Source: Macrostomum lignano (taxonomy: Eukaryota). Taken from it: DNA of 64,000 nucleotides. Of this stretch, positions 10,657 through 55,116 are shown one piece after another; the stretch's first letter is position 1; each line of letters starts with the position of its first letter. Location: the NCBI GenBank assembly GCA_002269645.1, contig NIVC01000153.1, forward strand, positions 62,001 to 126,000. The letters are read 5' to 3'. The notes under the pieces were generated by a model, which was given only the letters and a program-made list of their open reading frames with translations, did no database searches and had not been told where the DNA came from. The position numbers and the translations under genes are program-made.

Positions 10657-13600
10657 ATGTCGGAAGAATCGTAAGTCGGTCATTCGAATAAATACATTTA
10701 AAATAGTTTTTGTACACGCTAATCTGGCCCTCGTATCACAAAATTTCAGTGTGAAAGTAGCAGTCAGAGTTCGGCCATTCAACCAGAGAGAGAAGGACCG
10801 TCAGGCTAAACTCATCATTCAAATGCAGGACAAAAATACAGCTATAACTAACCCTGACAGTGAGTTAATTTTTTATCCAGTATTTTATCTCTTTGGGGCT
10901 GTATGATATTAGCTGTCATAATATCACTATTCCTTCCCTGGCATCTCACTTCGCTCCCTGACATCTCACTTCCTTCCCTGACATCTCACTTCGTTCCCTG
11001 ATATCTCACTTCGTTCCCTGACATCTCACTTCGTTACCTGACATCTCACTTTCTTCCCTGACATCTCGATTCCTTCCCTGACATCTCACTTCCTTTCTGA
11101 CATCTCGATTCCTTCCCTGACATCTCACTTCCTTTCTGACATCTCTTTTTCTTCCCTGACATCTCACTTCGTTCCCTGATATCTCACTTCGTTACCTGAC
11201 ATCTCACTTTCTTCCCTGACATCTCGATTCCTTCCCTGACATCTCACTTCGTTACCTGACATCTCACTTCCTTTCTGACATCTCTCTTTCTTCCCTGACA
11301 TCTCACTTCCTTTCTGACATCTCTCTTTCTTCCCTGACATCTCACTTCGTTACCTGATATCTCACTTTCTTCCCTGACATCTCGATTCCTTCCCTGACAT
11401 CTCACTTCCTTTCTGACATCTCTCTTTCTTCCCTGACATCTCACTTCCTTTCTGACATCTCGATTCCTTCCCTGACATCTCATTTCCTTTCTGACATCTC
11501 TCTTTCTTCCCTGACATCTCACTTCCTTTCTGACATCTCTCTTTCTTCCCTGACATCTCACTTCGTTCCCTGACATCTCACTTCCTTCACTGATATCTCA
11601 ATTTCTTCCCTGACATCTCACTTCGTTCCCTGACATCTCACTTCCTTCACTGATATCTCAATTTCTTCCCTGACATCTCACTTCGTTCCCTGACATCTCA
11701 CTTTGTTCCTTGACATATCGATTCCTTCTCTGACATCTCACTTCCTTCACTGACATCTCGATTTCTTCCCTGACATCTCGATTCATTCCCTGACATCTCA
11801 CTTCGTTCCCTGACATCTCGATTCCTTCCTTGACATCTTACTTCGTTCCTTGACATCTCGATTCCTTCCCTGACATCTCACTTCGTTCCCTGACATCTCA
11901 CTTCGTTCCTTGACATATCGATTCCATCTCTGACATCTCACTTCCTTCACTGACATCTCAATTTCTTCCCTGACATCTCGATTCATTCCCTGACATCTCA
12001 CTTCGTTCCCTGACATCTCGATTCCTTCCTTGACATCTTACTTCGTTCCTTGACATCTCGATTCCTTCCCTGACATCTCACTTCGTTCTCTGACATATTC
12101 GATTTCTGCCCTGACATTGTACTTCTATTCCTGACATCTCGCTTTCATTCCTGACGTTTCACTTTTTATGTCAGACATATATCAGTCATGCAGTTTCGCT
12201 AGAAATAGCCATATGTAAGTGGCAGCAGTTTAATAAAGTACCAAAATAAAAAAATTATAACAAAACGAATCCCAAATATTTCAGATCCTTCAGACGTCAA
12301 GACGTTCGCATTCGACTATTCCTACTGGTTAGTGCACTAAATCGAAGTCTTCACGGCTGAAATTCTGCAGTAATTGTCCTGACAACCTGTACTTTTTTAG
12401 GTCGCATGACGGATTCGAAGAGAGGCCGGACGGAGTGCTCGAGCCGCAGTCGGCCAGCTCGAACTACGCCAGCCAGAAGCGAGTGTTTGGCGACCTAGGC
12501 CAGGGCGTCCTTAACAACGCCTTCCTTGGCTACAATTGCTCCCTGTTCGCCTACGGACAGACTGGCGCGGGAAAATCGTATTCGATGGTTGGCTACGGCA
12601 GCAACAGGTTTATTCATGTTGCTATATGAATATGGGGTTGGCTAATGGGGTTGGCTAATGGTGGTGTCTAATAGGTTGGCTAATGGAGAATAGCTAATAG
12701 ATTTTAGGGTAAGCTAATAGAGGGTAGCTAATAGAGAGTAGCTAATAGATTTTAGGTTTAGCTAATACATTGCATCTGTGGTGATGGGGCTCAAGGGCTC
12801 GGTCCTTTCGTGCCCTTTTCCCAGACCCGGGTTCGCGTACTGACCCTGGCTGCGGTCCTCCACTGACACGCGTACGACGCGGTGTCCGTCGGGACTAGGC
12901 TGCTCGAGCGTACGACGCATGACAGCCTACAGACTCGCGTACGACGCAGAGCTGCTTGGGGTGGGACCGGCGTACGACGCACTTAATCCCCCTAAGGTGC
13001 CTAGTACAGAGGCAGACCCAAATGACTTGCAAATTGGAAGGCTTACCAGCCGCGATTTTGGTCGTACAACAAGACACAGCGCCGTCAGAGCAGTGGTAGT
13101 ATTGATCGGTATTCTTTTAGTTGTATTTGTATCGCAATTAACGCTGGCACTATCACCGGGGAGCCACGAAGAAGACGAGAATGGGGTCTCAAGGGGGTCC
13201 GAATAAATAGGCAGCAAACTGGGGGTTGAGGGCGCGGGATAAAGGCAGAAAAGGGAGCTTAGACATCAGCATAGGAAAAACATGAGCCGTACCAGCCAAT
13301 CGCCGGGGCGCAGCACGGCAGACTGGGACTGGCAGCCAATCACAAACAGGGGCGGGGCAGCAAAGCTAACAAAAGAATGGGGCGGGGTCGCACGGGGCGC
13401 ACACAGAGCAAGGGGGGTTTGACTAAACGGAAAAGGCCTAGGCAGGGAGGGGGGGTACGCACGCGCAGAAGTGCAGGTGGGTGAGTCACAAAATCTGAGG
13501 ATGGGGAGAGGACGGCCGACTGGCCCGGCGTAGCAAAGTAGCAAAGTACACACAGTACTAATAATAACACATTCATGACACATCTAATAGAGTGAAATTC

Positions 13601-16600
13601 TGAGCTAATATGGGTAGATACTACTGTGTGATCTGCACAGTGCGGTCACAAAAGCGCCATAAACATCATGAAACACTAATTGCACCTTCCCTCCCCCTTC
13701 CCAAACGCCAACACTCCAGAGGTATTGTGCCAATCACGTGCGACGAGCTATTCAAGACGATCGCGGAGAATTCCAGCAATTCTGCACAGGTGACAGCTAA
13801 AAACAGTTATATTATAATGATCCCAGGTTATTGGCTGAAAATTCCGTCTGATTTAATGCATACAAATTTATGCATGTTTGCTTTAATTCAACATTTTTCT
13901 CATTTTTGTATGCATGCCTGCGCGCGTAGCTGAGCAAGAAATCCGTTGTCATGGCAACGGAAGAATTCTCAAATCCGGCATCAAATTGAGTCGCAAACTG
14001 CTGCCATTGCAGTTTTGCCATTTTGACGTGAACAAAAAACGGGGATAGAGGCGGGAGGCAGGTTTTCTGTTTATAAAAGGAATTCTCACATCTGCTCCGC
14101 GCTTATTCAAACAGCTGGGTTCAGGGATTCGGGAGTGCATCTGGTTGGGTTGGGGAGGGAGGGAACTAGCTCGTATATTGGGAGAATATTGCATATCTGC
14201 TTTTTTCTCTCTTCTCTCTCTCCGCAGACTCTCACAATTGCCATGCAGTTTTTCTCAACCCTGTTGTCATGACAACAGAAACTTAATACTTCCTTATATA
14301 TAACTCAGAGCGAACTATTTGACACAGCTAGTCGCCTGCAGCTACAATGCAGACACGATGGTTTCAATTGAGGTGGATGCAGCTGAACCCCCCCTCAACC
14401 ACCACGCAGCCCCAACCTGAAGGCTGCTTCGTATCGACCAGGGGGAAAGCTTGAAAGCTGCGGGCCTCTTGTTGGCTTCTCCCTCCTAGTCGTTCTCTCC
14501 TTCTAAGCTTGCAGAAGCAGCACGCTTCCTGCTTTCTTCTTCCGTTCATTTTAGTACAGTGCAGCCCCAGCCTCAACTCCAAGTGTTGCAGGCTCTGCTG
14601 CTTTCGGGACGATAAAGCTTGTGGCATCTGGAGCTCTGCACTTGCTGGAAACTGAACTTGGAGAGCCCAGGGATGCCTGAGATGGCGAGGCAAACATTGC
14701 CAGCCCAAGTCGCATGCCTACGTGATTGAGGCAATTGCTTGTTGCTAGGGGGCCTAAGTGCAGCCGTGACACTCTATTTGCCAATCGCTTTCCCGCATGG
14801 CTGAAACATTGCAGAACTCTATTTCGGGTTTCAGAACGATCGAGAACTTATGAAAAAGCAGGACTGCTACAAGTACTGTATTCAGTATATAAGTGGTAAA
14901 TTCTATTGTTAAACGAACAAATCGTTAAAATACTTTTGCTTTTACGCTTGCTCAGGGAAGTGGAACAATGGGATGGCGGCTGGCTTGAACCTTAGTACGG
15001 ATTTATCAGGTTTACTTCAGGGGCGCTGATGCATGGCCGTTCTTAGTTGGTGGAGCGATTTGTCTGGTTCATTCCGATAGAGAACGAGACTCAAGTCTGC
15101 TAAACAGTACGCTGATACATCTTCGTCGGTGCTGACTTCTTAGAGGGACAAGCGGCTTGAAGACTCTCTTATGCAACAAAGTGAAGCAAAAAAGCACAGC
15201 CGTCAAGCGTGTCTCTTGGTTGCGCGCAATACTTGGTGTTGTGGCGCCCCAATATCCTTGGTGGGCGCCACTGTCTCTCGGTGGGCGCTCCAACCCCTAT
15301 CTCATAAGCCAGTGGATGCCATGCTGCTCAAGAAGTGAAAAAGTTTAGCTCCTGTCCTTCGTCAAGCTTGCTCACCTCTTTCATTTAAATTCTGGAATTC
15401 CCGGGTATCAAGAATCAGGGTCACCTGTTTTCCGACAGCTTGCTTCCTCCCGGTACCCACACTTGTGTCCCCATTACCCGTGTCCCCACACCCGTGTCCC
15501 AACACATGTTTCCCCACACTTGTGTCCCCACACCCGTGTCATGTCCCCACACCCGAGTCCCCACACCCCGTGTCCCCCCACTTGTGTCCCCAAATCCGAG
15601 TCCCCACACTCTGTGTCCCCACACCCGTGTCTTCACCCCGTGTCCCCACACCTGCGTCCCCACACCTGTGTCCCCACACATATTTCCCCACACCCGTGTC
15701 ATGTCCCCACACCCCAAGTGTCCCCACACTTGTGTCCCCACACCCGAGTCCCCACACCCCCTGTCCCCACACCCGTGTCCCCACACCAGAGTCCCCATAC
15801 CCCCGTTTCCTGACACCCGTGTCCCCACATCAGTTTTCCGACACCCATCTCCCACCACGCAGCGCTACGAGGTGACCTTCTCAATGCTGGAGATCTACAA
15901 CGAGAACGTCCGCGATCTTCTTGGCGACGCCTCGGCAAAGTCCGGCCTACCGATTCGGCAGCACCCCAGCCAGGGCTTCTACGTGCACGGCCTGAAGCGG
16001 GTGCCAGTGGGCAGCTACAGGGAGATCGAGCAGCGCATGGAGCAGGGCACGGCCAGTCGGACAGTGGCGGCTACCAATATGAACGCTACGAGTTCCAGGG
16101 CGCACACAGTAGTCACGATTGTCTTCGATCAGATTGCTGGCGGCGGCGGCAAAGAGACGAAGAAGAGTAGCGTTATGAATCTGGTGGACTTGGCAGGTGA
16201 GCTCGGAAGATTATTAATGCTTATCGAATACCTGTCTCCAAATACCTGTCTCCGAATACCTGTCTCCGAATACCTGTCTACGAATACCTGTCTCCGAATA
16301 CCTGTCTCCGAATACCTGTCTCCGAATACCTGTCTCCGAATATCTGTCCCAGCATACCTGTCTCCGAATACCTGTCCCCGAATATCTGTCTTCAAATACC
16401 TGTCTCCGAATACCTGTCTCCGAATACCTGTCTCCGAATACCTGTCTCCGAATACCTGTCTCCGAATACCAGTCCCCGAATACCTGTCTCGGAATACCTG
16501 TTTCTGAATACCTGTCTCGGAATACCTGTCTCGGAATACCTGTTTCTGAATACCTGTCTCGGAATACCTGTCCCCGAATACCTGTCTCGGAATACCTGTC

Positions 16601-19600
16601 TCTGAATACCTGTCTCCGAATACCTGTCTCCGAATACCTGTCCCCGAATACCTGTCCCCGCATACCTGTCTCGGAATACCTGTCTCCAAATACCTGTCTC
16701 CGAATACCTGCCTCCGAATACCTGTCTCGCAATACCTGTCTCTCAATACCTGTCTCGCAATACCGTATTTACTACTTGCCCACAATGCATTCATACGCCA
16801 GGTTCTGAAAGGGCGGACAGCACAGGAGCTACTGGCGACAGACTCAAAGAAGGCGCCAACATCAACAAGTCCCTGTCAGCACTGGGCAACGTGATCTCCG
16901 CTCTGGCTGACCTGTCCACTGGCAAGAAGAAAGTGATGGTGCCCTATAGGGACTCCGTTCTAACTAAGCTGCTGCAGAATGCTCTTGGCGGCAACAGGTG
17001 AATTTGGATGGGATCAAGTTTTATAAGGATGTAATACTGAGGATGTAAGAATGTAATTCTGTGGCGCTTATGTTTGGTGCTATTGAGTGCCGAATCGGGT
17101 GACTAATTTGTGTTTGAACTCGTGGAGGTGTCGGTGGTGTAGGGCAGCGCAGCACAGCGGTAAACCCTTGGTTCGATTCGCGGCCGCATTCATTTGCTAT
17201 GGCTTGTGTGCACGCGAAAATTAGCCACCGGGGTTGCTGTGCGATTCACACCCATGATCGCTAAACCCCCCAAGGCACAGAGAGTGTACATGCCTGACGA
17301 TTAGACAGTCAGGGCCGATGTACACCCTGTGTGAGCGTATGCATGACTGCTGTGCCTGCGTACAGTATTGGCGCGATCGCATGTGCTCAGAGTCAACTGA
17401 ATGGGCAGAGTTGCCGTCAGCGCTGGCTGTGGGACGATGCCGCCGTACGTGCACCGCAACCCTCCTGCGAATATTCATATTTTTAATTGGGTGTCAGTCT
17501 TTAATAGCCTTTTTGACCTAGCAACTTCTCAGTATAGATAAGCCACTTCTCCTACTGCCAGTAGCATCCAAAGAGCTTGAAAAACTCGATTGAGAAATTT
17601 TAACTCCAGCAAAACGGTGATGATCGCCGCCCTGTCCCCGGCCGACATCAACTACGACGAGACGCTGAGCACTCTGCGCTACGCTGATCGGGCAAAGAAA
17701 ATTAAAAATCAAGCCGTAGTGAATGAGAATCCTATGGATAAGCTGCTGCGCGAGCTGCAGGTGAGAATTGAGAGAGAGAGGGTTGAGAGAGAGGTTGAGA
17801 GTTACATTAGAGGGTTGAGAGAGGGTTGGGAGTTACATTAGAGGGTTGAGAGAGGGTTGAGAGTTACATTAGAGGGTTGAGAGAGGGTTGGGAGTTACAT
17901 TAGAGGGTTGAGAGAGGGTTGGGAGTTACATTAGAGGGTTGAGAGAGGGTTGAGAGTTACATTAGAGGGTTGAGAGAGGTTTGAGAGTTACATTAGAGGG
18001 TTGAGAGAAAGGAGATTGAGAGAGAAAGTTTGAAAGAGAGAAAGAGAGAGAGGGGGTTGAGATAGAGGGTTGAGAGAGAGGATTAGAGTTAGGTTTGTAG
18101 ATAGGCTGAAACTTTGGGGTCACTCAGTGCTATTTATATAGTGTGACTTGAAGTCTGTCCGGCGCGGTCACTCTATGCTACTATGCAAGAGAATATTCAA
18201 TTTACTAAAAAGAAAACATTCTCCTAACTCCAAAATCCAGATGGAGAACGAACGTTTAAAGAAGGTGCTGGATTCTGGAGATCTGAGTAGCGCAGGATTC
18301 CCGCAGCAACAGCAGCAGACCGGCATGTCCAAAGAAGGTCTATGCTCAATTTCATGAGTACCCTTTGCGGCTGTATGCCAGGCCTTTGTTTTTAATTTAC
18401 TCTCAACTCTCTTTCAGACGTGGAAAAAATGCGCAAAGAACTTGAAGAGGAAATTCGGGCCCAGCTGATGTCCAACAGTGAGCTAATGCAGCAGAGCAGC
18501 TCTGACAATTGGGAGGCCAAGGTTGGTCAGGCACTGATTTTCTCATGAAAGAAAATATTGTTTCAGAAAATCAGAAAGATTCCCTGTCTCAGCTAATGTG
18601 AGAAATTCCTGTCTCAGTCAATCAGAGGAATCCTGTCTCAACCAATCAGAAGGTTCCCTGTCTCAACCACAGAATAACTAGATGGGTCACTCATCACATT
18701 TGCGTGCAAGCTACTTTCAGTTCAGTAGTAAGTTAAACAGAAGCGATTTGATTTTTAAAGCCAAGGCTCATTTATTGACTATTACCCCCCCCAGCTTGAA
18801 CCCTCCAACTGCGCCTTTCCACACTACCCCGGCCCAGCCCCAATTTTTATTGCCTTTCTCAGAATTCCAGCCTAAAGCTGCCATGTACATTTCAGTGGAC
18901 TGTCTAATGTACATTATTACTGACCAATTAGCAAGTTATTTGCGCCTGCAAGCTTCGGCTTCTAAATTTACCAAAGTCATTTTAGCTGCCTGTATCTTTA
19001 TAAAATAGTCTATATATTCTTCTTTGCTACAGAACTAAAAATAGAAATCTGTTTTACTAAGTACGAGTGTATATATGCCTGAGTGGCCCATCTAGTTATT
19101 TTAGTATCTGTGGTCTCAACCAATCAGAAGGATCCCCTGTCTCAGCCAATGAGAGTAGTTCCTGTCTTAGCCAATCAGAGTAGTTCCTGTCTTAGCCAAT
19201 CAGAAGATTCCCTGTCTCAACCAATCAGAAGATTCCCTGTCTCAGCTCAGAAATCCGAATTCGATTCCGTGCCAACTCTAACAAACAAAAACTTCAAAGC
19301 TCGCCGAAGCTCGAGCCGATCTCGCCCCGGTCAGCGAAGCGGCAGACAAAAAGTCGCGAATTCCGCACCTGCTGAACCTGAACGAGGATCCAATGCTGTC
19401 AGGGGTGGTGGTTCATTTTTTGGAGTCGGCCGAGATTTTGATTGGCCGATCGGAGGAGGAATTGCAGCCGCAGATTCGCCTGATGGGCCTGTCAATCTCG
19501 AAGCGACATGCCGTGATTGCCCGACTAACTGACACGGAATTTGAAATTCGACCGGCAATCCAGGGTGCCAAGACTCTTGTGAATGGCCTGCCGTTGACTG

Positions 19601-22600
19601 GCCCGATGGAGCTCACTCACAAGGATCGGATTGTGTTCGGTGAGTAAATCTTTCTTAGGTTTTGGTCCTAGCCAGTCAGAGACTAGCTGAATCCTAGCCA
19701 ATCAGGGAGGAGCATGTTTCTAGCCTATCAGGGAGAAGCATGTTTTTAGGCAATCACTAGCAATTTAGTGCCCCCCTTCGGGCGGCCGATAAGAAAGGGG
19801 CAAAATTTATTTGTTAAAATCCTGGTAGCGATTAGTATGGCATGTAATTAGTCAATCATAGATTAGCTAGATCAAAGCCAATCAGGGAGTATCTTGATTC
19901 TAGCCAATCAGATTTTAGCTTGATTCTAGCGAATCAAAGAGTAGCTTTATTATAGCCAATTAGATAGTAGCTTGATTCCAGCCAGTCAGAGTGTAGCTTG
20001 ATTCTAGCCAATCATGGAGGAGCATGTTTTTAGCCAATCAGAGACTAGCTGGATCCTAGCCAATCAGAGAGAATCTTGATTCTAGCCAATCAGAGTTTAG
20101 CTTGACTCTATCCAATCAGAGTGAGATAGATAATCGAATACAATTTTCGAATATTCAAAACAAATTGATTCCGGTAGAAAACAGAAAAAGTAACAAATTC
20201 CACTAACACCTGGACCCATTCGCCAATGCCAGGATCAAATCACGTGTACGTATTCATCAACCCGAAGAACCGGTCATGCAACGCCGGTTTACCGAAGCGC
20301 ATCAACTGGGAATTTGTGCAGAAGGAAATTGCCAATGTCAAGGGTTTTGCCACCGGATCTGCCGGTCTGACTAAAGGCAAGCGATTTATTTACTACTGAT
20401 AATAGTGTTCTGACGTACATATAGCACTAAATTTATTGAAGTTTACGTAAAAACGAATAATTTCAGAGCAAGCAGTTGTGCAGGAGCAAATCTTGGAGCT
20501 CATTCCGATGGTAACGGAGGTGAACGCGATCTCCGATGAGCTGAACAAATATCGATCGTTTGAGGTCATCCTGCTGCCAGTCACTCGACCAGATGGCACC
20601 AAGGGGTCTAGGTAGGTCCGCATTGGATGTCTTAGGTAAATCTAGATTGGGTTTCTTACGTAGGTCTAAATTGGGTGTCTTACGTAGGTCTAAATTGGGT
20701 GTCTTACGTAGGTCTAAATTGGGTGTCTTACGTAGGTCTAAATTGGGTGTCTTACGTAGGTCTAAATTGGGTGTCTTACGTAGGTCTAAATTGGGTGTCT
20801 TACGTAGGTCTAAATTGAGTGTCTTACGTAGGTCTAAATTGGGTGTCTTACGTAGGTCTAAATTGGGTGTCTTACGTAGGTCTAAATTGGGTGTCTTACG
20901 TAGGTCTAAATTGAGTGTCTTACGTAGGTCTAAATTGGGCGTCTTACGTAGGTCTAAATTGGGTGTCTTACGTAGGTCTAAATTGGGTGTCTTACGTAGG
21001 TCTAAATTGAGTGTCTTAGGTACACGTTGTGAGTCCAGTTTGGTCAAGATTTGAAGTCTAGGTTACTAGGTAAATATTGGGGGTCCAGCAGTATGCTCCA
21101 TTGACAGTCTCAGTGTTCAACAGCCGTACCCCTCGCCGTTGAAACTGAAAAGTTTAAGAGTGGTGATCAGTCACTCGAAAACTCCCACTTCTAGACACTG
21201 GGAACAAGTGCCTACGTATATGAAAAGTAAAAAATCTTACTGGAGCGGCTCCTCGTGTAACTTGCAAACGTCTTGGTCTTGAAAGGTGTAGGTGAGCTAG
21301 CTGGTCTCGCTGTGCTGTAGTGACGGGTGTAGGTGAGCTAGCTGGTCTCGCTGTGCTGTAGTGACGACAGGCTTCGGTGAATTGCTGTCTCCGGGAGCCC
21401 TTGACTTTATCTGTGGGTCGACCAAAAACGAGAGCGAATCAGAAGTCTTGACGGTGTACTCGAGCTGGGAATTAACAATGGAACGTGCGCCCAAATGGAC
21501 AATTGAATTCTCCGAGTTCTGTAATAGGTCCTCCTGAAGGGCGTCTTCTTCGTTACGTCCGAAACGTAAGGGATAACTCAAATCAATGAATAGATCCTAG
21601 GAAACAAGGAGGCCTTTCTCAAATGTATCGACAATAAACGGCTCTCGTAAACTTAATCAATCAACTTATTAACGCTAGTTACAAAGAACTAAATCCGGTA
21701 AGCGTTTAGCAATTGGACAGGTGTAGTCTCTCAGAGATGGGTCTTCTTTTTTCTTTTTTTAAAGTCTTCTTTGAGGCCGCTCTGAGTCGGAATTTTTTAC
21801 TCGAATTTTCACATTTATTTATAGTAAATGTTTGGAGAGAAATGGTTTAAGATCGGATATTTACTTATGTCATATATGGAGTTATAAGCAAACACAGCTG
21901 CTGAAATCCGGTTCCTTGATCAAACAAATGTTGGTTCTACGTAGGGTTCTGAGTCACTCTGTTTGCACATGACTCATTTTAAATTTACTTTAAGTAGCAC
22001 ATTACTGTATGATTTTAACAGCTCTCTACAAAACCCGCAGGTGCGCGGTGCAGATGCAGGACCTGCTGAGCGACCTGGAATGGCGCTGGGAGCGCGGAAA
22101 GTTCATGAACCGGCGATTCCTCATGCTGGAACTGTACCAACGTTTCCAGGCAGGCGACGCATCCGTGCACTCGGTTGCTAAGGACGCCGACCCTTTCTGG
22201 GAGCCGCCCGAAGAGGTTACTGTCGGCACTGCCACCCTGTTCCTACAGTCGCTGGCCTACTGTCTGGATTTTGAAGATCGACTGCCGATTGTCGATCATC
22301 GCGGAGTTGTTGAAGGTCACGTGACTGCCGGCCTGACCCCCTGCGACTCGGACGGCCAGCCGCTTGGTGAAGACGAATTCGTTGAAGAGCCCGAGGACTT
22401 GCTTGGCCGGCCGCTGCGATTCAATGTCCGGATTGAGTCGGCTGAAGTGCTCAGACAGCGTCACGCCCGCGGCGCCTGCCGGGTGACCTTCGCGCTGCTG
22501 AGCCGGTCGGCCACAACGCAGACTCTGGCCGATACCGCGGCGCCCAAATTCGCCTTCTCGGAGAAGTTCAGCCTGGCCAGCGTGCAGCCGCAGCACCTCA

Positions 22601-24504
22601 AACTGCTGACTCAGGGCAGCGTGACGCTTGAGGTCGGCAGCTCGCATCCACTTCATTGCACTCTGCGACCCTACCTGGGCTCACAATCTAAACCCACCTG
22701 GACCCACAATCTAAACCCACCTGGACCCACAATCTAAACCCACCTGGACCCACAATCTAAACCCACCTGGACCCACAATCTAAACCCACCTGGACCCACA
22801 ATCTAAACCTACCTGGACCCACAATCTAAACCTACCTGGACCCACAATCTAAACCCACCTGGACCCACAATCTAAACCTACCTGGACCCACAATCTAAAC
22901 CTACCTGGACCCACAATCTAAACCCAACTGGACCCACAATCTAAACCCACCTGGACCCACAATCTAAACCCACCTGGACCCACAATCTAAACCCACCTGG
23001 ACTCACAATCTAAACCCACCTGGACCCACAATCTAAACCTACCTGGACCTACAATCTAAACTCACCTGGACCCACAATCTAAACTCACCTGGACCCACAA
23101 TCTAAACCCACCTGGACCTACAATCTAAACTCACCTGGACCCATAATCGAAACCTACCTGGACCCACAGTCTTATCCGAATTTGTCGCCGTGACAACTGT
23201 CTATTTTATTTGCCAGGTGCTGTGCCAGCAGCGCGAAGCCCAACCAGACACTCGGCTGGCCGGCCTGTCCACCAGGCAGCTGCGCGAGCGAATCCGCGTG
23301 AGCGGAGGCGGCGGCAACGGCGGCGGTGGCGTTACTTCCGGTCCCGGAGGCGCCGGCGAAGGTTCTTCGGGTTTCGATGTTGGCGGAGGTGGCAACGGCG
23401 GCGGCGGCGGTGGCGGCGGGGCGGATGCAGCCGAGCTGAGCCGGGCCCGGGGCGAGCTGGTGGCCCTTCAGCATCGAGTGGCCCGTCTGGAGGCCCGGGA
23501 GCGCCGCCTGATGCAGCTGTGCTCGGACTGGGCGAGCAAAGCCGACGGCAGCGGCGGGGATTATCACGGCCTGCTGCGGGCCCTGACCGCTCTGGCCAGC
23601 GGGCCGGGCGGCCGATTTCGTGGAAAAGCCGGACTGGTTGGAAAGGTGAACCTTTTGACCCAACCTGTGCTGCTTGTGATATCCGTGATACCTGTAATGC
23701 TTGTGATACCTGTAATGCTTGTGATACCTGTGATGCTTGTGATACCTGTGATGCTTGTGATACCTGTAATGCTTGTGATACCTGTGATACCTGTATTGCT
23801 TGTGATGCTTGTGATACTTGTGATGCTTGTGATACCTGTGATGCTTGTGATACCTGTAACGCTTGTGATGCTTGTGATACCTGTGATGCTTGTGATACCT
23901 GTGATACCTGTGATACCTGTGATACCTGTGTTGCTTGTGATGCTTGTGATACTTGTGATGCTTGTGATACCTGTGATACCTGTGTTGCTTGTGATGCTTG
24001 TGATACTTGTGATGCTTGTGATACCTGTGATGCTTGTGATACCTGTGATGCTTGTGATACCTGTGATACCTGTGATACCTGTGGTGCTTGTGATACCTGT
24101 GATACCTGTGATACCTGTGATGCTTGTGATACCTGTAATGCTTATGATACCTGTGATGCTTGTGATACCTGTGATGCTTGTGATACCTGTGATGCTTGTG
24201 ATACCTTTCAAAATGAGATGCTTGTATTGCCTGATATACCTTTTATACTTGCGACGCGGTTTAAAAATTTTGGCTCCATTGGTAATTGATTTCCTACCCT
24301 TAACATACTGTGTTTTTACCTTGACATTAATTGACCTTTCAGATGATGCAACTGAGAAAAGGAGCGGCAAATGTGGATCAACAGCAGGAGCAGTCATTGA
24401 ATGGTGGCGATTCGGCAGTCACGGTGGAGCCACCACCGCCTAGCACTGCTTCTGGAGAGACGGCTGAGTTAGCAAAGAAAAGCAAAACTTGTGCTGCAAT
24501 GTAG
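10657..24504 (+). CDS. KIF28: Kinesin-3 motor, KIF28/KLP-6-like (motor, FHA, stalk, C-terminal CaaX), about 1045 aa, 16 exons
   Basis: Exons 10657-10670, 10750-10859, 12285-12327, 12401-12607, 13720-13789, 15863-16196, 16802-16997, 17610-17760, 18241-18337, 18418-18521, 19300-19639, 20233-20376, 20467-20611, 22041-22632, 23217-23645, 24343-24504 sum to 3138 nt with consistent phases. Motifs: [29 protein letters not shown]-loop [26 protein letters not shown], switch I NATSSRAH, switch [63 protein letters not shown] plus [13 protein letters not shown] and DPFWEP. The kinesin-3 call is firm; the subfamily call is from recalled motifs. Confidence 0.9.
10935..12160. repeat. Intronic minisatellite, 20-bp unit CTGACATCTCACTTCGTTCC
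   Basis: Fills kinesin intron 2. Confidence 0.95.
15031..15156 (+). pseudogene. Isolated, diverged 18S rDNA fragment in kinesin intron 5
   Basis: GCATGGCCGTTCTTAGTTGGTGGAGCGATTTGTCTGGTT...GAACGAGACT...ACTTCTTAGAGGGACAAGCGGC matches the conserved eukaryotic SSU sequence with substitutions; the flanks are not rDNA. Confidence 0.88.
15455..15850. repeat. Intronic degenerate repeat, about 14-bp GTGTCCCCACACCC
   Basis: Directly upstream of the exon 6 acceptor; forms the spurious N-terminus of ORF 15440..16507. Confidence 0.9.
16225..16760. repeat. Intronic minisatellite, 14-bp GAATACCTGTCTCC
   Basis: Tandem copies in kinesin intron 6. Confidence 0.93.
17133..17470 (+). mobile_element. tRNA-derived SINE, family A, copy 1
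   Basis: A-box-like TGGTGTAGGGCAG and B-box GGTTCGATTCG; body shares CCCCCCAAGGC..AGTGTACATGCCT..GGGCCG.TGTACAC.C.TGTGTGAG and the 3' part with 26861-27240. Confidence 0.7.
17765..18090. repeat. Intronic repeat, about 31-bp GAGAGAGGGTTGAGAGTTACATTAGAGGGTT
   Basis: Tandem copies after the exon 8 donor. Confidence 0.88.
20620..21020. repeat. Intronic minisatellite, 24-bp TACGTAGGTCTAAATTGGGTGTCT
   Basis: Tandem copies after the exon 13 donor. Confidence 0.93.
22680..23170. repeat. Intronic minisatellite, 23-bp CTGGACCCACAATCTAAACCCAC
   Basis: Tandem copies in kinesin intron 14. Confidence 0.93.
23680..24205. repeat. Intronic 9-bp-unit repeat TGTGATACC/TGTGATGCT
   Basis: Explains the CDACDT / VIPVML / ITGITS ORFs. 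Confidence 0.93.
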
Positions 24505-24848
24505 GACTGACTGACTGACTGACTGACTGACTGACTGACTGACTGACTGACTGACTGACTGACTGACTGACTGACTGACTGACTGACTGACTGACTGACT
24601 GACTGACTGACTGACTGACTGACTGACTGACTGACTGACTGACTGACTGACTGACTGACTGACTGACTGACTGACTGACTGACTGACTGACTGACTGACT
24701 GACTGACTGACTGACTGACTGACTGACTGACTGACTGACTGACTGACTGACTGACTGACTGACTGACTGACTGACTGACTGACTGACTGACTGACTGACT
24801 GACTGACTGACTGACTGACTGACTGACTGACTGACTGACTAACTGACT
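24505..24848. repeat. (GACT)n microsatellite starting immediately after the kinesin stop codon
   Basis: TAG at 24502-24504 is followed directly by GACTGACT... Confidence 0.98.
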
Positions 24849-25544
24849 GCAATGAAATCGAGAAGTATCTACCTACATACCAGAGTAGTGAGTAAACTTA
24901 TGTACGTACTTTTTGAATCTAATTATGCTTGTAACATTTTTCGGCTTTAAATGCATTCTAGTGTGATTACTTATTAAGAGATTATCAATAATTATTAACA
25001 GTACAGTTTTTCAAAGTTCACCGTGAACTTTACGGACCATGAAAGTCTAAATTAGCCTTTCTGGTTATTTATTTATTTTTATTTTTACTCTTGTCGACCA
25101 TGTTGTATTAATAGGTAAGCAGTCATGAAGTTAATTAACAAATGTACTAAAAATTTGACAATGCAGAAATTTGGATAACACCGCTGAAAGAACTTGTGCT
25201 CACAAGCGTTGTGCCTCATCGAGGAAAGAGAAAATATAGGCATTGGTTTGGTTGAAAGCGGAGCGCAAACGAAGTTCATTACTCTTCAATGAACTGGTGG
25301 GAATCAAAATGTGCGTCAGTGATTGAGAAGCAATTTGAAATGACTGATGTGCACGGTTGAGCACAGATGAGCATAGATGAGCACAGATGAGTACCGATGA
25401 GCACTGATGACCACAGCACAGTTGAGTACAGATGAGTACAGATGAGTACAGATGAGCACAGATGAGCACCGATGAGCACTGATGAGCACTGATCAATTGC
25501 TTGCTTGAAACTTGAAGCTGTAAATCAGAGTGAAGAGCAATAAT

Positions 25545-36650: not shown

Positions 36651-36837
36651 TAAGACAAGCACCATTACGCTTGCATGAGTGTCTGAATTGATGTTCCGCT
36701 TGTCTGAATAAATAGGGAATTGATTCGAAATAAGAGTTAAAAGGCTAGGATACAATGCCTATAACTGGCTGCAATAACGAGCTTCAATTTCAATTTCAAT
36801 GTCAAATGCATGCGCAGCCAATCCTAAAATCAATGAA

Positions 36838-37401
36838 ATGTCTCGAACTAGCGTGAAAATAGCGCCAGGCGCTGTCGTCTGCAGCGAGTGCGAACTGCGA
36901 GGCGACATCACGATTGGCCAGCGAACTGTTATCCATCCGAAGGCGCGAATCCTAGCCGAGGCTGGGCCAATCATCATTGGCGATGGAAATTTAATTGAAG
37001 AGGTTGCCGTCATTCATAATAGGCCAGACGAGAGCAATCCAAACGAGAAGGTGATGATAATTGGATCGCAGAACATATTCGAGGTTGGCTCCCGTTGCGA
37101 GGCGGTCAAAGTTGGCGATTTCAACGTACTCGAGGCGCGCAGTTTTGTATCACGTGACACTGTTGTTAGCAATGGCTGTACTATTGGCGCAATGTGCAGC
37201 GTCACTGGCCGCGAGGTCCTGCCAGACAACTGCGTGGTCTACGGAGCCGCCAGTCATCGGAAAGTGGTCAGCGAGAAGCCGCCAGCTCAGACTCTGCAAT
37301 TGGACTTTTTGGCTAAGATTTTGCCCAACTTTCATCATATTAAAAAGGCTGGCGCGAGTTCTGCCGCAGCGGCCGCCGCTAAACAGCATAGGCCGTCTTA
37401 A
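36838..37401 (+). CDS. DCTN6: Dynactin subunit 6 (p27), single exon
   Basis: [50 protein letters not shown]...[12 protein letters not shown]...[20 protein letters not shown]. An in-frame upstream ATG at 36799 is an alternative start. Confidence 0.95.
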
Positions 37402-38815: not shown

Positions 38816-38965
38816 AACAATGTCAATACCAGGGGACAGCTGTCCCCTCTGTTTCTGCCCCCCCTCTGTTCCCCGGTGCCTCTATCATAAACAATAGACG
38901 GATGTATGTAGTGTTATTATTATTACTATTAATATGGCTATTGCAGCGCCCAAAGCACAGCAAGC

Positions 38966-41900
38966 ATGCCAGCCTGCGACTCGAATCCCGAGGCAACCTA
39001 CAAAGCCGTTATCTTGCTAGGCGGCCCGGCCAAAGGAACGAGATTTCGTCCGCTGTCACTCGACCAGCCGGTTCCATTGATGTCCATCGGCGGCTATCCG
39101 TTGATATTTCATCACGTTGAGGCGTGCGCAGCCGTGCCTGGCATGCGAGAGATCATCCTGATTGGCTACTATCCCAAAGATCAGCTAAGCCAGTTTGTTG
39201 ACGAATGCCAGCGCAAGTTCGGCATCAGGATGCGCTATTTACAGGAGTTCACGCCGTTGGGCACAGCGGGCGGTCTGTATCATTTCCGGGACCAGATTAT
39301 GCTGGGCGATCCGGCCGCCTTCTTTGTTATGAACTCTGACGTCTGCTGCGATTTCTCTTTGGCCGATATGCTGGCTAAGCATAGGCCCGGGACCTATACT
39401 GTGATGTGCACGGAGGCTACTAGGTCTCAGAGCGTGCAGTACGGCTGCGCGGTCATACGGAAGGGCACGGACGAGGTGAGGCTTAGCCTACATGTACATG
39501 TGACTGGTTAGGGGGTTTAGTTTGCATTTCTAAACTCTTCTCTGTCACTCTCACCGAACTTTAACCCCCCCCCTCTTGCCAGATATGTCCCTCTCCCTTC
39601 TCTACCGCTCTCCCCTGCTCTCTTCTCTACTGCTCTCCCCTGCTCTCTTCTCTACCGCTCTCCCCCGCTCTCTTCTCTACCGCTGTCCCCTGCTCTCTTC
39701 TCTACCGCTGTCCCCTGCTCTCTTCTCTACCGCTCTCCCCTGCTCTTCTCTACCGCTCTTCCCTGCTCTCTTCTCTACCGCTCTCCCCTGCTCTCTTCTC
39801 TACCGCTCTCCCCTACTCTCTTCTGTACCCCGTTCTTATAAGATCCCGTAGATCCGTCAGAATAACCATTAAGGAGAAACCCATAGGCTTGGGTACTTTT
39901 GAAAAGCTCAACAATACAGCACTGATCATCATCAACATTTTCACATTGATTTGAATTCAAGTCAGGTGTCTATATACCATATATCTAATCAATGAAACTC
40001 CTATTCAGATAATGCACTATGTAGAGAAGCCGGCCACATTTGTCAGCACAATGATCAATTGCGGCGTGTACATACTCAGCCCCAGCATTTTTCAATACTT
40101 AAAATCGGCCGTTAAAGTGCACAAAGATGCACATTTCACGTGAGAAACTCTGCTCCATACGTTCTAAATTTTGAGTTTTTACAAAATATTAACAACTGCG
40201 CCTTATGCATGCATTAATAATCTATAAATCTATTCCTTGCAGCTTCGATCTGTCCTCTCAGTGCAACGAGTGCGTTCAGATGGAACAAGAGGTATTCCAG
40301 CCATTGGCTAGTCGTAACTGCCTATTTGCTTACGTCACGACCCGCTTCTGGAGTCAGGTCAAAACCGCTGGGTGAGGCTTCCGTATATATATAGATTCTT
40401 TTCACTGTTGACAATACTGCAGGATAGCGAGATGCTGCGTAGTTGTAATTCTCGACTGTGTAACATTCTCAAGCTCTTCTCTGCCGCTCTTCCCGAACTT
40501 TACTACCTACTCAGTTCTCTTCCCGAACTTTACCACCTACTCAGTTCTCTTCCCGAACTTTACCACCTACTCAGTTCTCTTCCCGAACTTTACCACCTAC
40601 TCAGTTCTCTTCCCGAAGTTTACCACCTACTCAGTTCTCTTCCCGAACTTTACCACCTACTCAGTTCTCTTCCCGAAGTTTACCACCTACTCAGTTCTCT
40701 TCCCGAACTTTACCACCTACTCAGTTCTCTTCCCGAAGTTTACCACCTACTCAGTTCTCTTCCCAAACTTTACCACCTACTCAGTTCTCTTCCCAAACTT
40801 TACCACCTACTCAGTTCTCTTCCCGAAGTTTACCACCTACTCAGTTCTCTTCCCGAATTTACCACCTACTCAGTTCTCTTCCCGAATTTACCACCTACTC
40901 AGTTCTCTTCCCGGATTTACCACCTACTCAGTTCTCTTCCCGTAGTTTACCACCTACTCAGTTCTCTTCCCGAACTTTACCACCTACTCAGTTCTCTTCC
41001 CGAAGTTTACCACCTACTCAGTTCTCTTCCCAAACTTTACCACCTACTCAGTTCTCTTCCCGAAGTTTACCACCTACTCAGTTCTCTTCCCGAAGTTTAC
41101 CACCTACTCAGTTCTCTTCCCGAAGTTTACCACCTACTCAGTTCTCTTCCCGAAGTTTACCACCTACTCAGTTCTCTTCCCAAACTTTACCACCTACTCA
41201 GTTCTCTTCCCGAATTTACCACCTACTCAGTTCTCTTCCCGGATTTACCACCTACTCAGTTCTCTTCCCGTAGTTTACCACCTACTCAGTTCTCTTCCCG
41301 AACTTTACCACCTACTCAGTTCTCTTCCCGAAGTTTACCACCTACTCAGTTCTCTTCCCAAACTTTACCACCTACTCAGTTCTCTTCCCGAAGTTTACCA
41401 CCTACTCAGTTCTCTTCCCGAAGTTTACCACCTACTCAGTTCTCTTCCCGAAGTTTACCACCTACTCAGTTCTCTTCCCGAAGTTTACCACCTACTCAGT
41501 TCTCTTCCCAAACTTTACCACCTACTCAGTTCTCTTCCCGAATTTACCACCTACTCAGTTCTCTTCCCGGATTTACCACCTACTCAGTTCTCTTCCCGGA
41601 TTTACCACCTACTCAGTTCTCTTCCCGGATTTACCACCTACTCAGTTCTCTTCCCGAACTTTACCACCTACTCAGTTCTCTTCCCAAACTTTACCACCTA
41701 CTCAGTTCTCTTCCCGAATTTTACCCCAATTCAGTTGTCTTCCCGAACTTTACCCTCTTTTTGATAAAAAAGCAAACAAAAAATATAAATTTGCATTTCT
41801 GAAAGCTATCTATTTTGAACAGATTTGTTTGTTAGAGCTGAAGATTTAAAATTTTGTAGAGCGTTTAGTCAATCAGTGAAAAATTTCACTTAGCTATAAA

Positions 41901-53799: not shown

Positions 53800-55116
53800 C
53801 AGGCGTGCAGATCAGCGTGCAGCCCGACTGGCCTTTGTCGCTGGCTGACGATGCGCCAATTTGGATCAACGTTCGCCAGCGTCGGCGGCCCGCAGACAGC
53901 GGTGGCGGCGGCAGCGCGCAGCAGCCGGACCTTCGAGCTCGAATTTCTCCGCTCCGACGCCCGCCTCGGCGCCGGAGGTGATGGCCGAAGTCGCGGACCA
54001 GCAGGATGAGATGGGGAGACGGCTACGGTGAAGCTGACACTCAGCCTGCGGAGCCGGGTCGCCTGTGCGTGCGCTACGTCTTCGGTGAGGCCGTCCACTT
54101 GGCAACGTTCCAATCGCCGCAAACTACTCTAGACGGGCCTCCATCAGGGCAAGGCGTCAACAGCATCGACGTCACACCTGGCGGCATCGGCGTCTCCTCA
54201 GACGCAGCCGGCCGGCTCCTCGTGTGGGACTCGGCCACCGGCGAGCCGCGGCGCCGGCTGGAGGGTACACAGGCACGTGTACACCTGCCGGTTCTTCCCT
54301 TCAGGCATTGTTGCTATGAGCGGCGGCGCCGACTGCCGCATCCGCGTTTGGGCTTGCGACACCGGCGTCTGCGCCGCCGTCATTGTCGGGCACGTCGGCG
54401 GCGTAGTCGGCCTGGCGCCAATCGAACGCGGCCGAAATCTGGTGTCGGCTGGTCGAGACGGCGTCGTACGACTCTGGGATGTCGGCCAGCAGCGGTGCCT
54501 GGCCAGCTACGGGGAGGCGTCCAGCCCGCCAGATCCCGTCAACAGCCTGTGCCTTGTGACGCCTGGGCCGCAGCTGTTGCCGGCAGAGGCGGCGCCGGCG
54601 TCCGACCGGGAGATCGGCACGGCCGGCAAAGCGGCCCTGGCCGGGCACGAGTCCGGTTGGCTGGTCTGCTACGGCCTGGCTGGCCAGCGGCGCGCCGTCT
54701 GGCGGAGTCGCCAGCCGTCGGCTGTGAATTTTGTCTGCTCGGCGCCGACGCCTGACGCCGCGCTGGCCGCCGTTGGATGCGCCGACGGCCGCCTGCTGGC
54801 GCTGCGATTCGACCGGCTACAGACGACGTCAGAGTCTCTCGAAGAAGTCGCCGACGTTGATCATGTGGGCGAGGAGCAGCGGCTGCTGATGCTGGGCCCC
54901 CTGCTGTGCGGCGTCTTCCTGCGCCGACCCGACCGGTTGGCTGTTGGCGCCCAGAATGGCGCCTGCGCGCTGCTTAGCCTGGCGCCTAGCCAGCAGCCGG
55001 AGATTTTGATGCAGCTGACTGGGCCGGACTGCGATCCGGTCTACTGCCTGGCCTGGGACGCTTCCCATCTCTACACCGGGTGCAGGGACGGGCGAGTGAG
55101 GAAGTACCGCTGCTAG
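53800..55116 (+). CDS. PAAF1: Proteasomal ATPase-associated factor 1 (WD40, Rpn14-like), interrupted by apparent frameshifts; start codon not located
   Basis: QISVQPDWPLSL..IWINV (N-terminal IQxDW motif), GVNSIDVTPGGIGVSSDAAGRLLVWDSATGEPRRRLEG, then in another frame VYTCRFFPSGIVAMSGGADCRIRVW...GHVGGVVGLAPIERGRNLVSAGRDGVVRLWDVG...GPDCDPVY...YTGCRDGRVRKYRC*. Confidence 0.82.

What the first reader, a model, noticed from the sequence alone, without database searches (positions are those of the whole stretch)
24343..24504. Kinesin-3 ends in a polybasic CaaX box (KKSKT-CAAM*)
The last exon translates [53 protein letters not shown]-stop. Cys-aliphatic-aliphatic-Met is a farnesyltransferase signal, and the upstream lysines resemble the K-Ras4B membrane anchor. 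Most kinesin-3 motors bind membranes through PH, PX or CAP-Gly domains or adaptors, none visible here. This motor may attach to cargo membrane through its own lipid. I do not know whether this has been described for KIF28/KLP-6 orthologues.
Basis: partly seen in the sequence, partly recalled or inferred. Interest (0 to 1): 0.7.

Follow-up and report, generated by a model that had tools for sequence, protein, structure and literature searches.

The report
Kinesin-3 motor with conserved lipid-anchor signal
A flatworm (Macrostomum lignano) kinesin-3 motor gene really does end in a prenylation (CaaX) signal, and the same signal ends most KIF28-like kinesins of animals and many protists but not the nematode and ray members, so an old class of motors probably carries its own lipid tail, which I found described nowhere.

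Summary
Window 24343-24504 (+) translates as written and ends KKSKTCAAM-stop. It is the last of 16 exons of a 1045-aa kinesin-3 (motor, FHA, KIF1B/MBS, MATH-like region) from Macrostomum lignano.

The exon looks real. The splice is clean and in phase 0. A 58%-identical paralogue has its last intron at the same place and ends SSKACSVM. Three genomic copies keep the box through synonymous changes.

The main result goes beyond the finding. Of 120 KIF28-like homologues, 110 end in Cys-x-x-x, with the motif G-S-[SKR]-[AT]-C-x-[ILVM]-[MQ]. Similar boxes end related kinesin-3s of choanoflagellates, Cyanophora, Hemimastix, a jakobid and other protists. The 30 nematode KLP-6 relatives retrieved and the ray KIF28 sequences lack it and fall in other paralogue groups.

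Farnesylation is therefore the likely fate of Cys1042. The K-Ras-like polybasic reading is weak: three lysines, and no such patch conserved in the family. The a2 alanine is unique in the family, although CAAM scores as a substrate in a published yeast screen.

No transcript or lipid evidence was obtainable. No paper linking KIF28/KLP-6 to prenylation was found. Known farnesylated kinesins are CENP-E and a trypanosome orphan.

The parts
10657..24504 (+). Whole coding region of the kinesin-3 gene, hand-built 16-exon model, 1045 aa
   Evidence: open frame of 3138 nt; 14 GT-AG introns and one GC-AG intron. Pfam domains; 98-99% identical to partial Macrostomum lignano models P0002 and P0003.
10657..17760 (+). 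Exons 1-8 (10657-10670, 10750-10859, 12285-12327, 12401-12607, 13720-13789, 15863-16196, 16802-16997, 17610-17760): motor domain and start of the neck (aa 1-375)
   Evidence: PF00225 Kinesin aa 11-356, E 6e-104; splice sites.
18241..18521 (+). Exons 9-10 (18241-18337, 18418-18521): neck coil / CC1 region (aa 376-442)
   Evidence: Kinesin_assoc aa 360-396.
19300..20376 (+). Exons 11-12 (19300-19639, 20233-20376): FHA domain and the sequence after it. Exon 12 ends at a GC donor (AAG|gcaagc at 20377).
   Evidence: FHA aa 489-556; the GC-AG junction gives ..GSAGLTKEQAVV... This matches the paralogue's GLSKEQ and the family consensus. Public models P0002 and P0003 use a GT donor 12 nt upstream and lack GLTK.
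20467..22632 (+). Exons 13-14 (20467-20611, 22041-22632): CC2, KIF1B/MBS domain and MATH-like domain (aa 604-849)
   Evidence: KIF1B aa 673-710; aligns to residues 590-851 of the C. elegans KLP-6 crystal-structure chain 7wrg_A, E 6.6e-38.
23217..23645 (+). Exon 15 (aa 850-992): linker with a Gly-rich insert, conserved coiled-coil segment (..[26 protein letters not shown]..) and conserved helix (..[25 protein letters not shown])
   Evidence: colinear with the tails of the paralogue, amphioxus, sea cucumber and others, up to the donor at 23646.
23646..24342 (+). Last intron, phase 0, mostly an 18-bp tandem array (23685-24206)
   Evidence: The paralogue has its last intron at the same codon boundary (..GCCAAG|gtgacc ... 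ttcgcag|ATGATGCGG).
24343..24504 (+). Exon 16, the terminal coding exon (aa 993-1045 plus stop): variable hydrophilic linker and CaaX box
   Evidence: Three genomic copies differ at 3-4 of 162 nt (1 non-synonymous, the rest synonymous). The upstream intron differs at 6-11% of aligned columns.
24475..24489 (+). K1037-K-S1039-K-T1041: small basic patch. Ser1039 sits at -7, which is invariant in the family; K at -6 and T at -5 fit the family motif S-[SKR]-[AT]-C.
   Evidence: Ser at -7 in 57 of 57 distinct CxxX-ending tails; at -6 S/K/R in 50 of 57; at -5 A/T in 54 of 57.
24490..24501 (+). CaaX box C1042-A-A-M1045 (TGT GCT GCA ATG)
   Evidence: The Cys codon is TGT in the window and TGC in the two other copies, a synonymous change. 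CAAM scores 4.47 (Ydj1 reporter, cut-off 3) in the yeast FTase screen.
24505..24849 (+). (GACT)n microsatellite, 86 copies, directly after the stop codon; presumably in the 3' UTR
   Evidence: It is present after the stop in all three genomic copies.

Best explanation
The window holds a Macrostomum lignano kinesin-3 of the KIF28-like, MATH-domain subfamily. Its last exon supplies a flexible hydrophilic tail ending in a CaaX box. Shown: the gene structure, the domain order and the deep conservation of a C-terminal G-S-x-[AT]-C-x-aliphatic-[M/Q] motif in this subfamily. Inferred: farnesyltransferase attaches a C15 farnesyl to Cys1042. The AAM tripeptide may then be removed and the new C-terminus methylated. 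The lipidated tail sits about 50 disordered residues beyond a conserved coiled-coil segment, which I take to be a dimerisation element. I infer that this lipid tethers the motor directly to its membrane cargo. One farnesyl with only three nearby lysines binds weakly, so stable attachment would need two tails (a dimer) or a partner on the membrane. Cargo binding, local crowding, dimerisation and release from the KLP-6-type autoinhibited fold would then be coupled, as established for PIP2-binding UNC-104/KIF1A. The invariant Ser three residues before the Cys is a candidate regulatory site.
For: Gene model and domains. Terminal exon: clean phase-0 splice; same intron position in the 58%-identical paralogue whose public model ends SSKACSVM; tail colinear with orthologues from the MATH-like domain to the C-terminus; three genomic copies keep KKSKTCAAM through synonymous changes in the Cys and Lys codons. 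Conservation: 110 of 120 homologues end CxxX, Cys(-4) and Ser(-7) are invariant among the CxxX-ending tails, a2 is only I/V/L/M, X is M or Q in 52 of 57 distinct tails, and there is no second Cys. These X residues are the farnesyltransferase class (PMC4733102; PMC3206815). Wider: 38 of 78 cluster representatives with the full MBS+MATH tail end CxxX, including choanoflagellates, Cyanophora, Hemimastix, Ancoracysta, Stygiella and Pharyngomonas; Mesostigma does too, with only a partial MBS/MATH match. In the tree all nine members of the window's group carry the box. CAAM scores above the cut-off for prenylation in the yeast CXXX screen (Ydj1 score 4.47 against cut-off 3; Ras-reporter score 4.96). 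The genome encodes prenyltransferase beta-subunit family genes at several loci and ICMT. No other membrane-binding domain was found.
Against: No transcript evidence for the exon 15-16 junction in this gene. A search with the 196-aa tail found nothing, and the public models of this locus stop at exon 14. No lipid was measured. The a2 alanine is unique among the 57 family tails, which all have I/V/L/M there, so this gene's box could be a poorer substrate or escape aaX cleavage. The basic patch is small. The relatives that have been studied experimentally lack the box, so there is no functional precedent within the subfamily. In the two known farnesylated kinesins the lipid is not shown to be a membrane anchor.
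Confidence: 0.6

Rival explanations
1. The Cys is farnesylated, but the lipid is a protein-protein or regulatory handle rather than a membrane anchor. It might insert into a pocket of an adaptor or a prenyl-binding chaperone, or into the motor's own autoinhibitory module.
For: In the known farnesylated kinesin CENP-E the lipid affects kinetochore localisation and microtubule affinity (PMC7475649; title of PMC10630089). In the T. brucei CaaX kinesin it affects localisation. The family has no second membrane signal: no second Cys, and a mean charge of +1.5. The extra conserved residues G-S-x-A before the Cys are not needed by farnesyltransferase as far as I know, which hints at recognition by something else.
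Against: No partner is known. Kinesin-3 motors typically carry membrane cargo. X switches to Leu or Phe (the geranylgeranyl class) in some lineages (Limulus CILL, Biomphalaria CVVL). That fits generic hydrophobic anchoring better than a pocket sized for farnesyl.
Confidence: 0.2
2. In this particular gene the box has decayed. With Ala at a2 the protein is poorly prenylated, or prenylated but not cleaved and methylated, while the paralogue (CSVM) carries the canonical function.
For: Ala at a2 occurs in none of the other 57 distinct family tails. The paralogue keeps a canonical CSVM. Uncleaved 'shunted' CaaX proteins exist, as for yeast Ydj1 (title of PMC5014548).
Against: CAAM scores as prenylated in the yeast screen. 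It also scores far above its CAAx neighbours in the Ras reporter: 4.96 against about 1 for CAAA and CAAV. All three genomic copies keep C-A-A-M with a synonymous change in the Cys codon.
Confidence: 0.1
3. The conserved C-terminal motif is not a prenylation site but another kind of C-terminal signal, for example a PDZ-type ligand or a redox or metal-binding cysteine.
For: Prenylation has not been demonstrated for any member. Positions -8 to -5 are conserved too.
Against: The Cys is fixed at exactly -4 across very distant eukaryotes. a2 is restricted to aliphatic residues. X is almost only M, Q, S, T, L or F, which are the prenyltransferase classes. Half the tails end in Gln, which from my own knowledge does not suit PDZ binding.
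Confidence: 0.05
4. The ORF is not used: the real mRNA ends elsewhere and the match to CaaX is an artefact of my gene model.
For: There is no transcript evidence, and public models of the locus end at exon 14.
Against: Those public models are plainly truncated: they end inside the MATH-like region at ..GSVTL and lack the N-terminus. The exon start (MM.L+) and end (SK.C..M) match the paralogue, with the same intron position. The exon diverges less than its intron among the copies. No other tail-like exon exists in the window.
Confidence: 0.05

Closest known systems
C. elegans KLP-6 (kinesin-3; crystal structure 7WRG) and vertebrate KIF28/KLP6
   Same: Same domain order: motor, neck coil, CC1, FHA, CC2, MBS, MATH. 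The window's aa 606-868 align to 7wrg_A residues 590-851 with E 6.6e-38. NCBI names the closest homologues KIF28.
   Different: All 30 nematode KLP-6 relatives retrieved end in K/R/S-rich tails with no CaaX. Ray KIF28 ends ..KFYSTK. In the trees they fall in two other paralogue groups (B and C) than the window's group A. The published KLP-6 structure does not resolve the C-terminal tail, and one motility study used a C-terminal GFP fusion.
CENP-E (kinesin-7), the classic farnesylated kinesin
   Same: An N-terminal kinesin motor with a C-terminal farnesyltransferase site (PMC7475649).
   Different: A different kinesin family with a long coiled-coil stalk and a mitotic kinetochore role. Its lipid is not described as a membrane anchor. 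It has no FHA, MBS or MATH domain.
Trypanosoma brucei KinesinCaaX (PMC3206815)
   Same: A kinesin ending in CVIM, shown by radiolabelling to be farnesylated. Deleting the box makes its localisation diffuse.
   Different: The authors describe it as restricted to kinetoplastids and not groupable with any kinesin family. The window's protein is a clear kinesin-3 with wide orthology.
Kinesin-3 motors that bind membrane lipids through domains (UNC-104/KIF1A PH domain, KIF16B PX domain)
   Same: The proposed logic is the same: the motor binds the cargo membrane directly, crowding there favours dimerisation, and the motor is activated (background in PMC10945585).
   Different: Here the membrane-binding element would be a covalently attached isoprenoid, not a lipid-binding fold. 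No PH or PX domain is present.
K-Ras4B farnesyl plus polybasic anchor
   Same: Farnesyl-type CaaX ending in Met, and the local string K-K-S-K-T-C resembles part of the K-Ras4B tail (my own knowledge).
   Different: Only three lysines, and net charge +1 over 20 residues. The patch is not conserved in the family.

Membership tests
Kinesin-3 family | N-terminal kinesin motor domain | tested here: met
   PF00225 aa 11-356, E 6e-104
Kinesin-3 family | FHA domain after the neck and first coiled coil | tested here: met
   PF00498 aa 489-556, E 7.6e-10; Kinesin_assoc aa 360-396
KIF28/KLP-6-like (MATH-domain) kinesin-3 subfamily | KIF1B/MBS domain followed by the MATH-like domain seen in the KLP-6 structure | tested here: met
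   PF12423 aa 673-710. Alignment to 7wrg_A 590-851, E 6.6e-38. Best homologues are named KIF28.
KIF28/KLP-6-like (MATH-domain) kinesin-3 subfamily | Strict (1:1) orthology with C. elegans KLP-6 or with vertebrate KIF28 | tested here: not met
   The window groups with cnidarian, amphioxus, mollusc, echinoderm and rotifer sequences (group A, SH-aLRT 100). Nematode KLP-6 is in group B (99) and ray KIF28 in group C (100). These are quick trees and only rays were sampled for vertebrates.
CaaX substrates of protein farnesyltransferase | Cysteine exactly four residues from the C-terminus | tested here: met
   C1042, then A-A-M and stop. Invariant among the CxxX-ending homologues.
CaaX substrates of protein farnesyltransferase | X residue of the farnesyl class (M, S, Q, A, C) rather than L or F | tested here: met
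   X = Met. The rule is as stated in PMC4733102 and PMC3206815.
CaaX substrates of protein farnesyltransferase | Aliphatic a2 residue (I, V, L, M in the classical rule) | tested here: inconclusive
   a2 is Ala, unlike all 57 family tails. Yet CAAM passes the empirical yeast FTase score, 4.47 against a cut-off of 3. PrePS could not be run.
CaaX substrates of protein farnesyltransferase | Flexible, accessible linker before the box | tested here: met
   The roughly 40 residues before the box are hydrophilic and rich in Pro, Ser and Gly. This is the one part of the tail that varies in length and sequence among orthologues. The KLP-6 C-terminal tail is unresolved in the crystal.
CaaX substrates of protein farnesyltransferase | Modifying enzymes encoded by the organism | tested here: met
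   PF00432 prenyltransferase beta-type genes at several loci and PF04140 ICMT in the window's genome. I did not work out which locus is the FTase beta subunit.
CaaX substrates of protein farnesyltransferase | Isoprenoid actually attached to the cysteine | not testable with these tools
   Needs metabolic labelling or mass spectrometry.
K-Ras4B-type farnesyl + polybasic membrane anchor | Strongly basic stretch (a run of lysines, high net positive charge) next to the farnesyl-Cys | tested here: not met
   K-K-S-K only; net +1 over 20 residues. Family mean +1.5, range -1 to +4.

The most novel reading that the evidence does not exclude
MATH-domain (KIF28-like) kinesin-3 motors are an ancient class of self-lipidated motors, possibly dating to the last eukaryotic common ancestor. 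A prenylated C-terminus, with its conserved S-x-x-C context, would be their original cargo or membrane attachment. It was replaced by a basic tail in nematode KLP-6 and lost in the vertebrate KIF28 lineage, which would explain why it has gone unnoticed. Every named organism that carries such a motor builds flagella or cilia at some stage (my own knowledge of these taxa), so the lipid may serve ciliary or periciliary membrane transport.
Probability: 0.4. Interest if true: 0.8.

Novelty: new member of a known kind. Interest (0 to 1): 0.66.

Why it matters
How KIF28/KLP-6-type kinesins find their cargo and become active dimers is open. Recent work states that KLP-6 stays a non-processive monomer after autoinhibition is released and needs 'other factors'. 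A 2025 review says it may dimerise 'through an unidentified mechanism'. A covalent lipid on the tail of most family members gives a simple, testable route: membrane tethering and crowding. It would add a third farnesylated kinesin lineage, the first in kinesin-3 and by far the most widespread. It would also make these motors potential targets of farnesyltransferase inhibitors and statins in many invertebrates and protists. Two practical warnings follow. C-terminal tags would destroy the signal. Results from nematode or vertebrate members, which lack the box, may not transfer to the rest of the family.

Tried and rejected
1. Transcript support. A search of the 5.8-billion-protein collection with the 196-aa tail (exons 15-16) as a stand-alone query found nothing. 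The only database proteins from this locus (P0002, P0003) are truncated at exon 14. The junction therefore rests on comparative evidence only.

2. Literature. No paper holds KIF28 with farnesyl, or KLP-6 with CAAX. The one paper with KLP6 and CAAX refers to the formin INF2. Kinesin-3 with prenylat*, PRENbase with kinesin, and all 37 KIF28 papers gave nothing relevant. 'CAAM' in text searches turned out to be the generic CaaM motif.

3. Alternative terminal exons. tblastn of ten orthologue tails against the window hits only exon 15.

4. PDZ-ligand reading: rejected because half the family ends in Gln.

5. K-Ras-like polybasic anchor: rejected as a family feature.

6. A first tree run failed on alignment time. 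It was redone with sequences cut at the end of the MATH-like domain, which also keeps the CaaX tail out of the tree.

7. To reach nematode KLP-6 I used a padded query whose scored region was the KLP-6 stretch printed in the PDB alignment.

8. Structure prediction was not run, because it would not bear on lipidation.
Full report
**Observation**

A (GACT)n microsatellite of 86 units starts at the very next base.

**Gene model**

The window is eukaryotic and intron-rich.
- From stop-to-stop frames and splice-site inspection I built a 16-exon model, 10657-24504 (+).
- The model has an uninterrupted 3138-nt frame coding for 1045 aa. Fourteen introns are GT-AG and one is GC-AG.
- Pfam finds a kinesin motor (aa 11-356, E 6e-104), Kinesin_assoc, FHA (489-556) and KIF1B (673-710). 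It finds no PH, PX or CAP-Gly domain.
- The region after the FHA domain aligns to residues 590-851 of the full-length C. elegans KLP-6 crystal-structure chain (7wrg_A, E 6.6e-38). In that paper this region comprises CC2, MBS and the MATH domain.
- The best database hits are partial Macrostomum lignano proteins at 98-99% identity. Next come proteins that NCBI names KIF28 or KIF28P from molluscs, amphioxus, annelids, cnidarians and others at about 40% identity. The organism is therefore the flatworm M. lignano.

**Is the ORF the real terminal exon?**

The last intron (23646-24342) runs from GGAAAG|gtgaac to tttcag|ATGATG, in phase 0. I could not get transcript evidence. The public models of this locus (P0002, P0003) stop at exon 14, and a search with the 196-aa tail alone found nothing. 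The comparative evidence is nevertheless good.
- M. lignano has a paralogue at 58% identity over the aligned post-motor region (P0004). Its public model reads ...FRTNAEIIAK-MMRLKRQMQDD...SSKACSVM.
- In the genome, that paralogue's last intron lies at the same codon boundary: GCCAAG|gtgacc ... ttcgcag|ATGATGCGG.
- The window's exons 15-16 are colinear with orthologue tails. The order is end of the MATH-like domain, a TTKELRQ-type linker, a conserved coiled-coil segment, a conserved helix, a variable hydrophilic stretch, and then the box.
- tblastn of ten orthologue tails finds exon 15 and no other tail-like exon in the window.
- The genome holds three copies of the exon. All encode KKSKTCAAM. 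They differ at 3-4 of 162 nt, one change non-synonymous and the rest synonymous. The synonymous changes include TGT to TGC in the Cys codon and AAA to AAG in a Lys codon. The 250 nt of intron upstream differ at 6-11% of aligned columns.

**Conservation of the CaaX box**

This is the main result.
- Of the 120 homologues returned, 110 end in C-x-x-x. The ten that do not mostly look truncated or mis-modelled at the C-terminus.
- In the 57 distinct CxxX-ending tails, Cys(-4) and Ser(-7) are invariant. Position -8 is mostly Gly and -5 is Ala or Thr.
- a2 is only I, V, L or M. X is Met (28) or Gln (24), with a few T, S and H. No second Cys lies nearby.
- Typical boxes are CVIQ, CVLQ, CSVM, CTIM, CAIM and CVVM. 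Met and Gln at X are the farnesyltransferase class.
- The window conforms at S(-7), K(-6), T(-5), C and M. Its Ala at a2 is unique in the family.

**Beyond close homologues**

A profile search of 1.84 billion cluster representatives widened the picture.
- Of the 148 new representatives among the 150 best hits, 44 end CxxX.
- 78 of them carry a full MBS+MATH tail, and 38 of those 78 end CxxX.
- Named carriers among animals: sea cucumber (two alternative last exons, CIVQ and CVVM), Diadema, Biomphalaria, Limulus, a millipede and Daphnia.
- Named carriers among protists: the choanoflagellates Savillea and Choanoeca, Hemimastix, Cyanophora (GSKACVIQ), Ancoracysta (KSKTCTIL), the jakobid Stygiella, Pharyngomonas, Mesostigma (partial MBS/MATH match only) and a Diphylleia isoform.
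- Named sequences without the box: ray KIF28 (three genera), a second Haliotis paralogue, Owenia, Salpingoeca urceolata, Gonapodya, Toxoplasma and Fabomonas.
- All 30 nematode KLP-6 relatives retrieved lack it and end instead in K/R/S-rich basic tails.

**Phylogeny**

Trees were built on the sequence up to the end of the MATH-like domain, so the box itself is excluded. They give three holozoan groups.
- Group A (SH-aLRT 100): the window gene, its paralogue, Adineta, Nematostella, amphioxus, Aplysia, Apostichopus, Antedon and one unnamed representative (P0123). All nine carry a CaaX box.
- Group B (99): Choanoeca, nematode KLP-6, arthropods, Diadema and second mollusc paralogues. Most carry CaaX, but the nematodes (and two unnamed representatives) do not.
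- Group C (100): ray KIF28, Owenia, a Haliotis paralogue and Salpingoeca. None carries CaaX.

The window gene is therefore KIF28-like but is not the strict orthologue of either studied protein. These are quick trees, and only rays were sampled for vertebrates.

**Is CAAM a plausible substrate?**

PrePS was not available. In the published screen of all 8000 CXXX sequences with yeast farnesyltransferase, CAAM scores 4.47 with the Ydj1 reporter, where the authors use a cut-off of 3. In the Ras reporter it scores 4.96, against about 1 for CAAA and CAAV and 5.63 for CAAQ. The M. lignano genome encodes prenyltransferase beta-type genes at several loci and ICMT.

**Mechanism**

Shown: the anatomy and the conservation. 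Inferred: farnesylation of Cys1042, possibly followed by removal of the AAM tripeptide and methylation, and use of the lipid to hold the motor on membrane cargo.

A single farnesyl with K-K-S-K is a weak anchor (my own knowledge of the two-signal rule). Firm binding would therefore need two tails or a partner. This would link cargo binding to dimerisation through the adjacent coiled-coil segment, and to release of the KLP-6-type autoinhibited fold. That is the logic accepted for PIP2-bound UNC-104/KIF1A (background).

The K-Ras-like polybasic reading is not supported as a family trait. The invariant Ser(-7) and the G-S-x-A context suggest an added layer, either phosphorylation or partner recognition.

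The main rival is that the farnesyl is a protein-binding handle, as in CENP-E. Lesser rivals are a decayed box in this gene, a non-prenyl motif, and a gene-model artefact.

**What is known**

Farnesylated kinesins on record are CENP-E (kinesin-7) and the kinetoplastid orphan KinesinCaaX. I found no paper linking KIF28, KLP6 or KLP-6 to farnesyl, prenyl or CAAX.

KLP-6 structural and motility work does not mention lipids (0 occurrences in either paper). The C-terminal tail is unresolved in the crystal, and one study used a C-terminal GFP fusion. Only open-access texts were searchable, so an earlier mention elsewhere cannot be excluded.

**Verdict**

The polybasic analogy is not supported. As a CaaX protein it is a new member of a known kind. 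The breadth of the conservation, and its absence from the nematode and ray lineages that include or stand for the studied proteins, are what make it worth following up.

Noticed in passing
window 10930-24206 (introns of the kinesin gene): Many introns are filled by their own short tandem array. Examples: 20-mer x62 (10930-12164), 14-mer x39 (16225-16764), 31-mer (17777-18008), 24-mer (20622-21022), 23-mer (22668-23172), 18-mer x30 (23685-24206). These arrays create long spurious open frames on both strands.
   Followed up: partly
window 24505-24849: A (GACT)86 microsatellite starts at the base after the stop codon and puts TGA in every frame. It follows the stop in all three genomic copies.
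   Followed up: partly
window 20365-20377: Two in-frame donors lie 12 nt apart at the end of exon 12. The public models use the GT donor and lack GLTK. The GC donor (AAG|gcaagc) gives GLTKEQ, which matches the paralogue (GLSKEQ) and the family consensus. This is either alternative splicing or an annotation error.
   Followed up: partly
window 10657-24504 versus database proteins P0002 and P0003: The public protein models of this locus lack the first two exons and everything after exon 14. One of them carries an apparent retained intron. The CaaX exon of this gene is in no database protein.
   Followed up: yes
window 23300-23420 (exon 15): A Gly-rich insert of about 45 residues ([39 protein letters not shown]) lies between the MATH-like domain and the tail coiled-coil segment. 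It is absent from the paralogue and from all the orthologues aligned.
   Followed up: no
G000 contigs C153, C169, C1383 and C567, C1343, C1407: Both kinesin paralogues are present in three near-identical genomic copies each. I think this reflects the polyploid M. lignano genome (my own knowledge).
   Followed up: partly
window 42199-46710 (-): An uninterrupted 1504-aa open frame lies on the opposite strand between two pieces of a GDP-mannose-pyrophosphorylase-like gene (NTP_transferase at 38933-39508 +; GMPPB_C/Hexapep at 51234-51680 +). It seems to be nested in that gene's intron. Its only Pfam hint is a sub-threshold DAAF9 CobW_C-like match.
   Followed up: partly
window 36778-37398 (+), 54133-55113 (+), 58233-59136 (-), 63260-63694 (-): Other gene pieces in the window: a hexapeptide-repeat protein, a WD40 protein, a Cys/Met-metabolism PLP enzyme, and a DDE_3 transposase remnant that is below the Pfam cut-off.
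   Followed up: partly
proteins P0122 and P0295 versus P0291-P0293 (Apostichopus japonicus KIF28 isoforms): The sea cucumber gene has two alternative C-terminal ends..GGSKACIVQ and ..SSSRMCVVM. Both are CaaX boxes.
   Followed up: no
proteins P0138, P0139, P0151, P0171 (unnamed representatives): A small clade of MATH-type kinesin-3 relatives ends in a Cys/His-rich, zinc-finger-like C-terminus (..C.EC...YC..C....HKA..) instead of a CaaX box.
   Followed up: no
nematode KLP-6 orthologues P0302-P0327: Where the CaaX is missing, nematode tails are strongly basic (K/R/S-rich). This may relate to the second microtubule-binding site reported in the KLP-6 tail.
   Followed up: no
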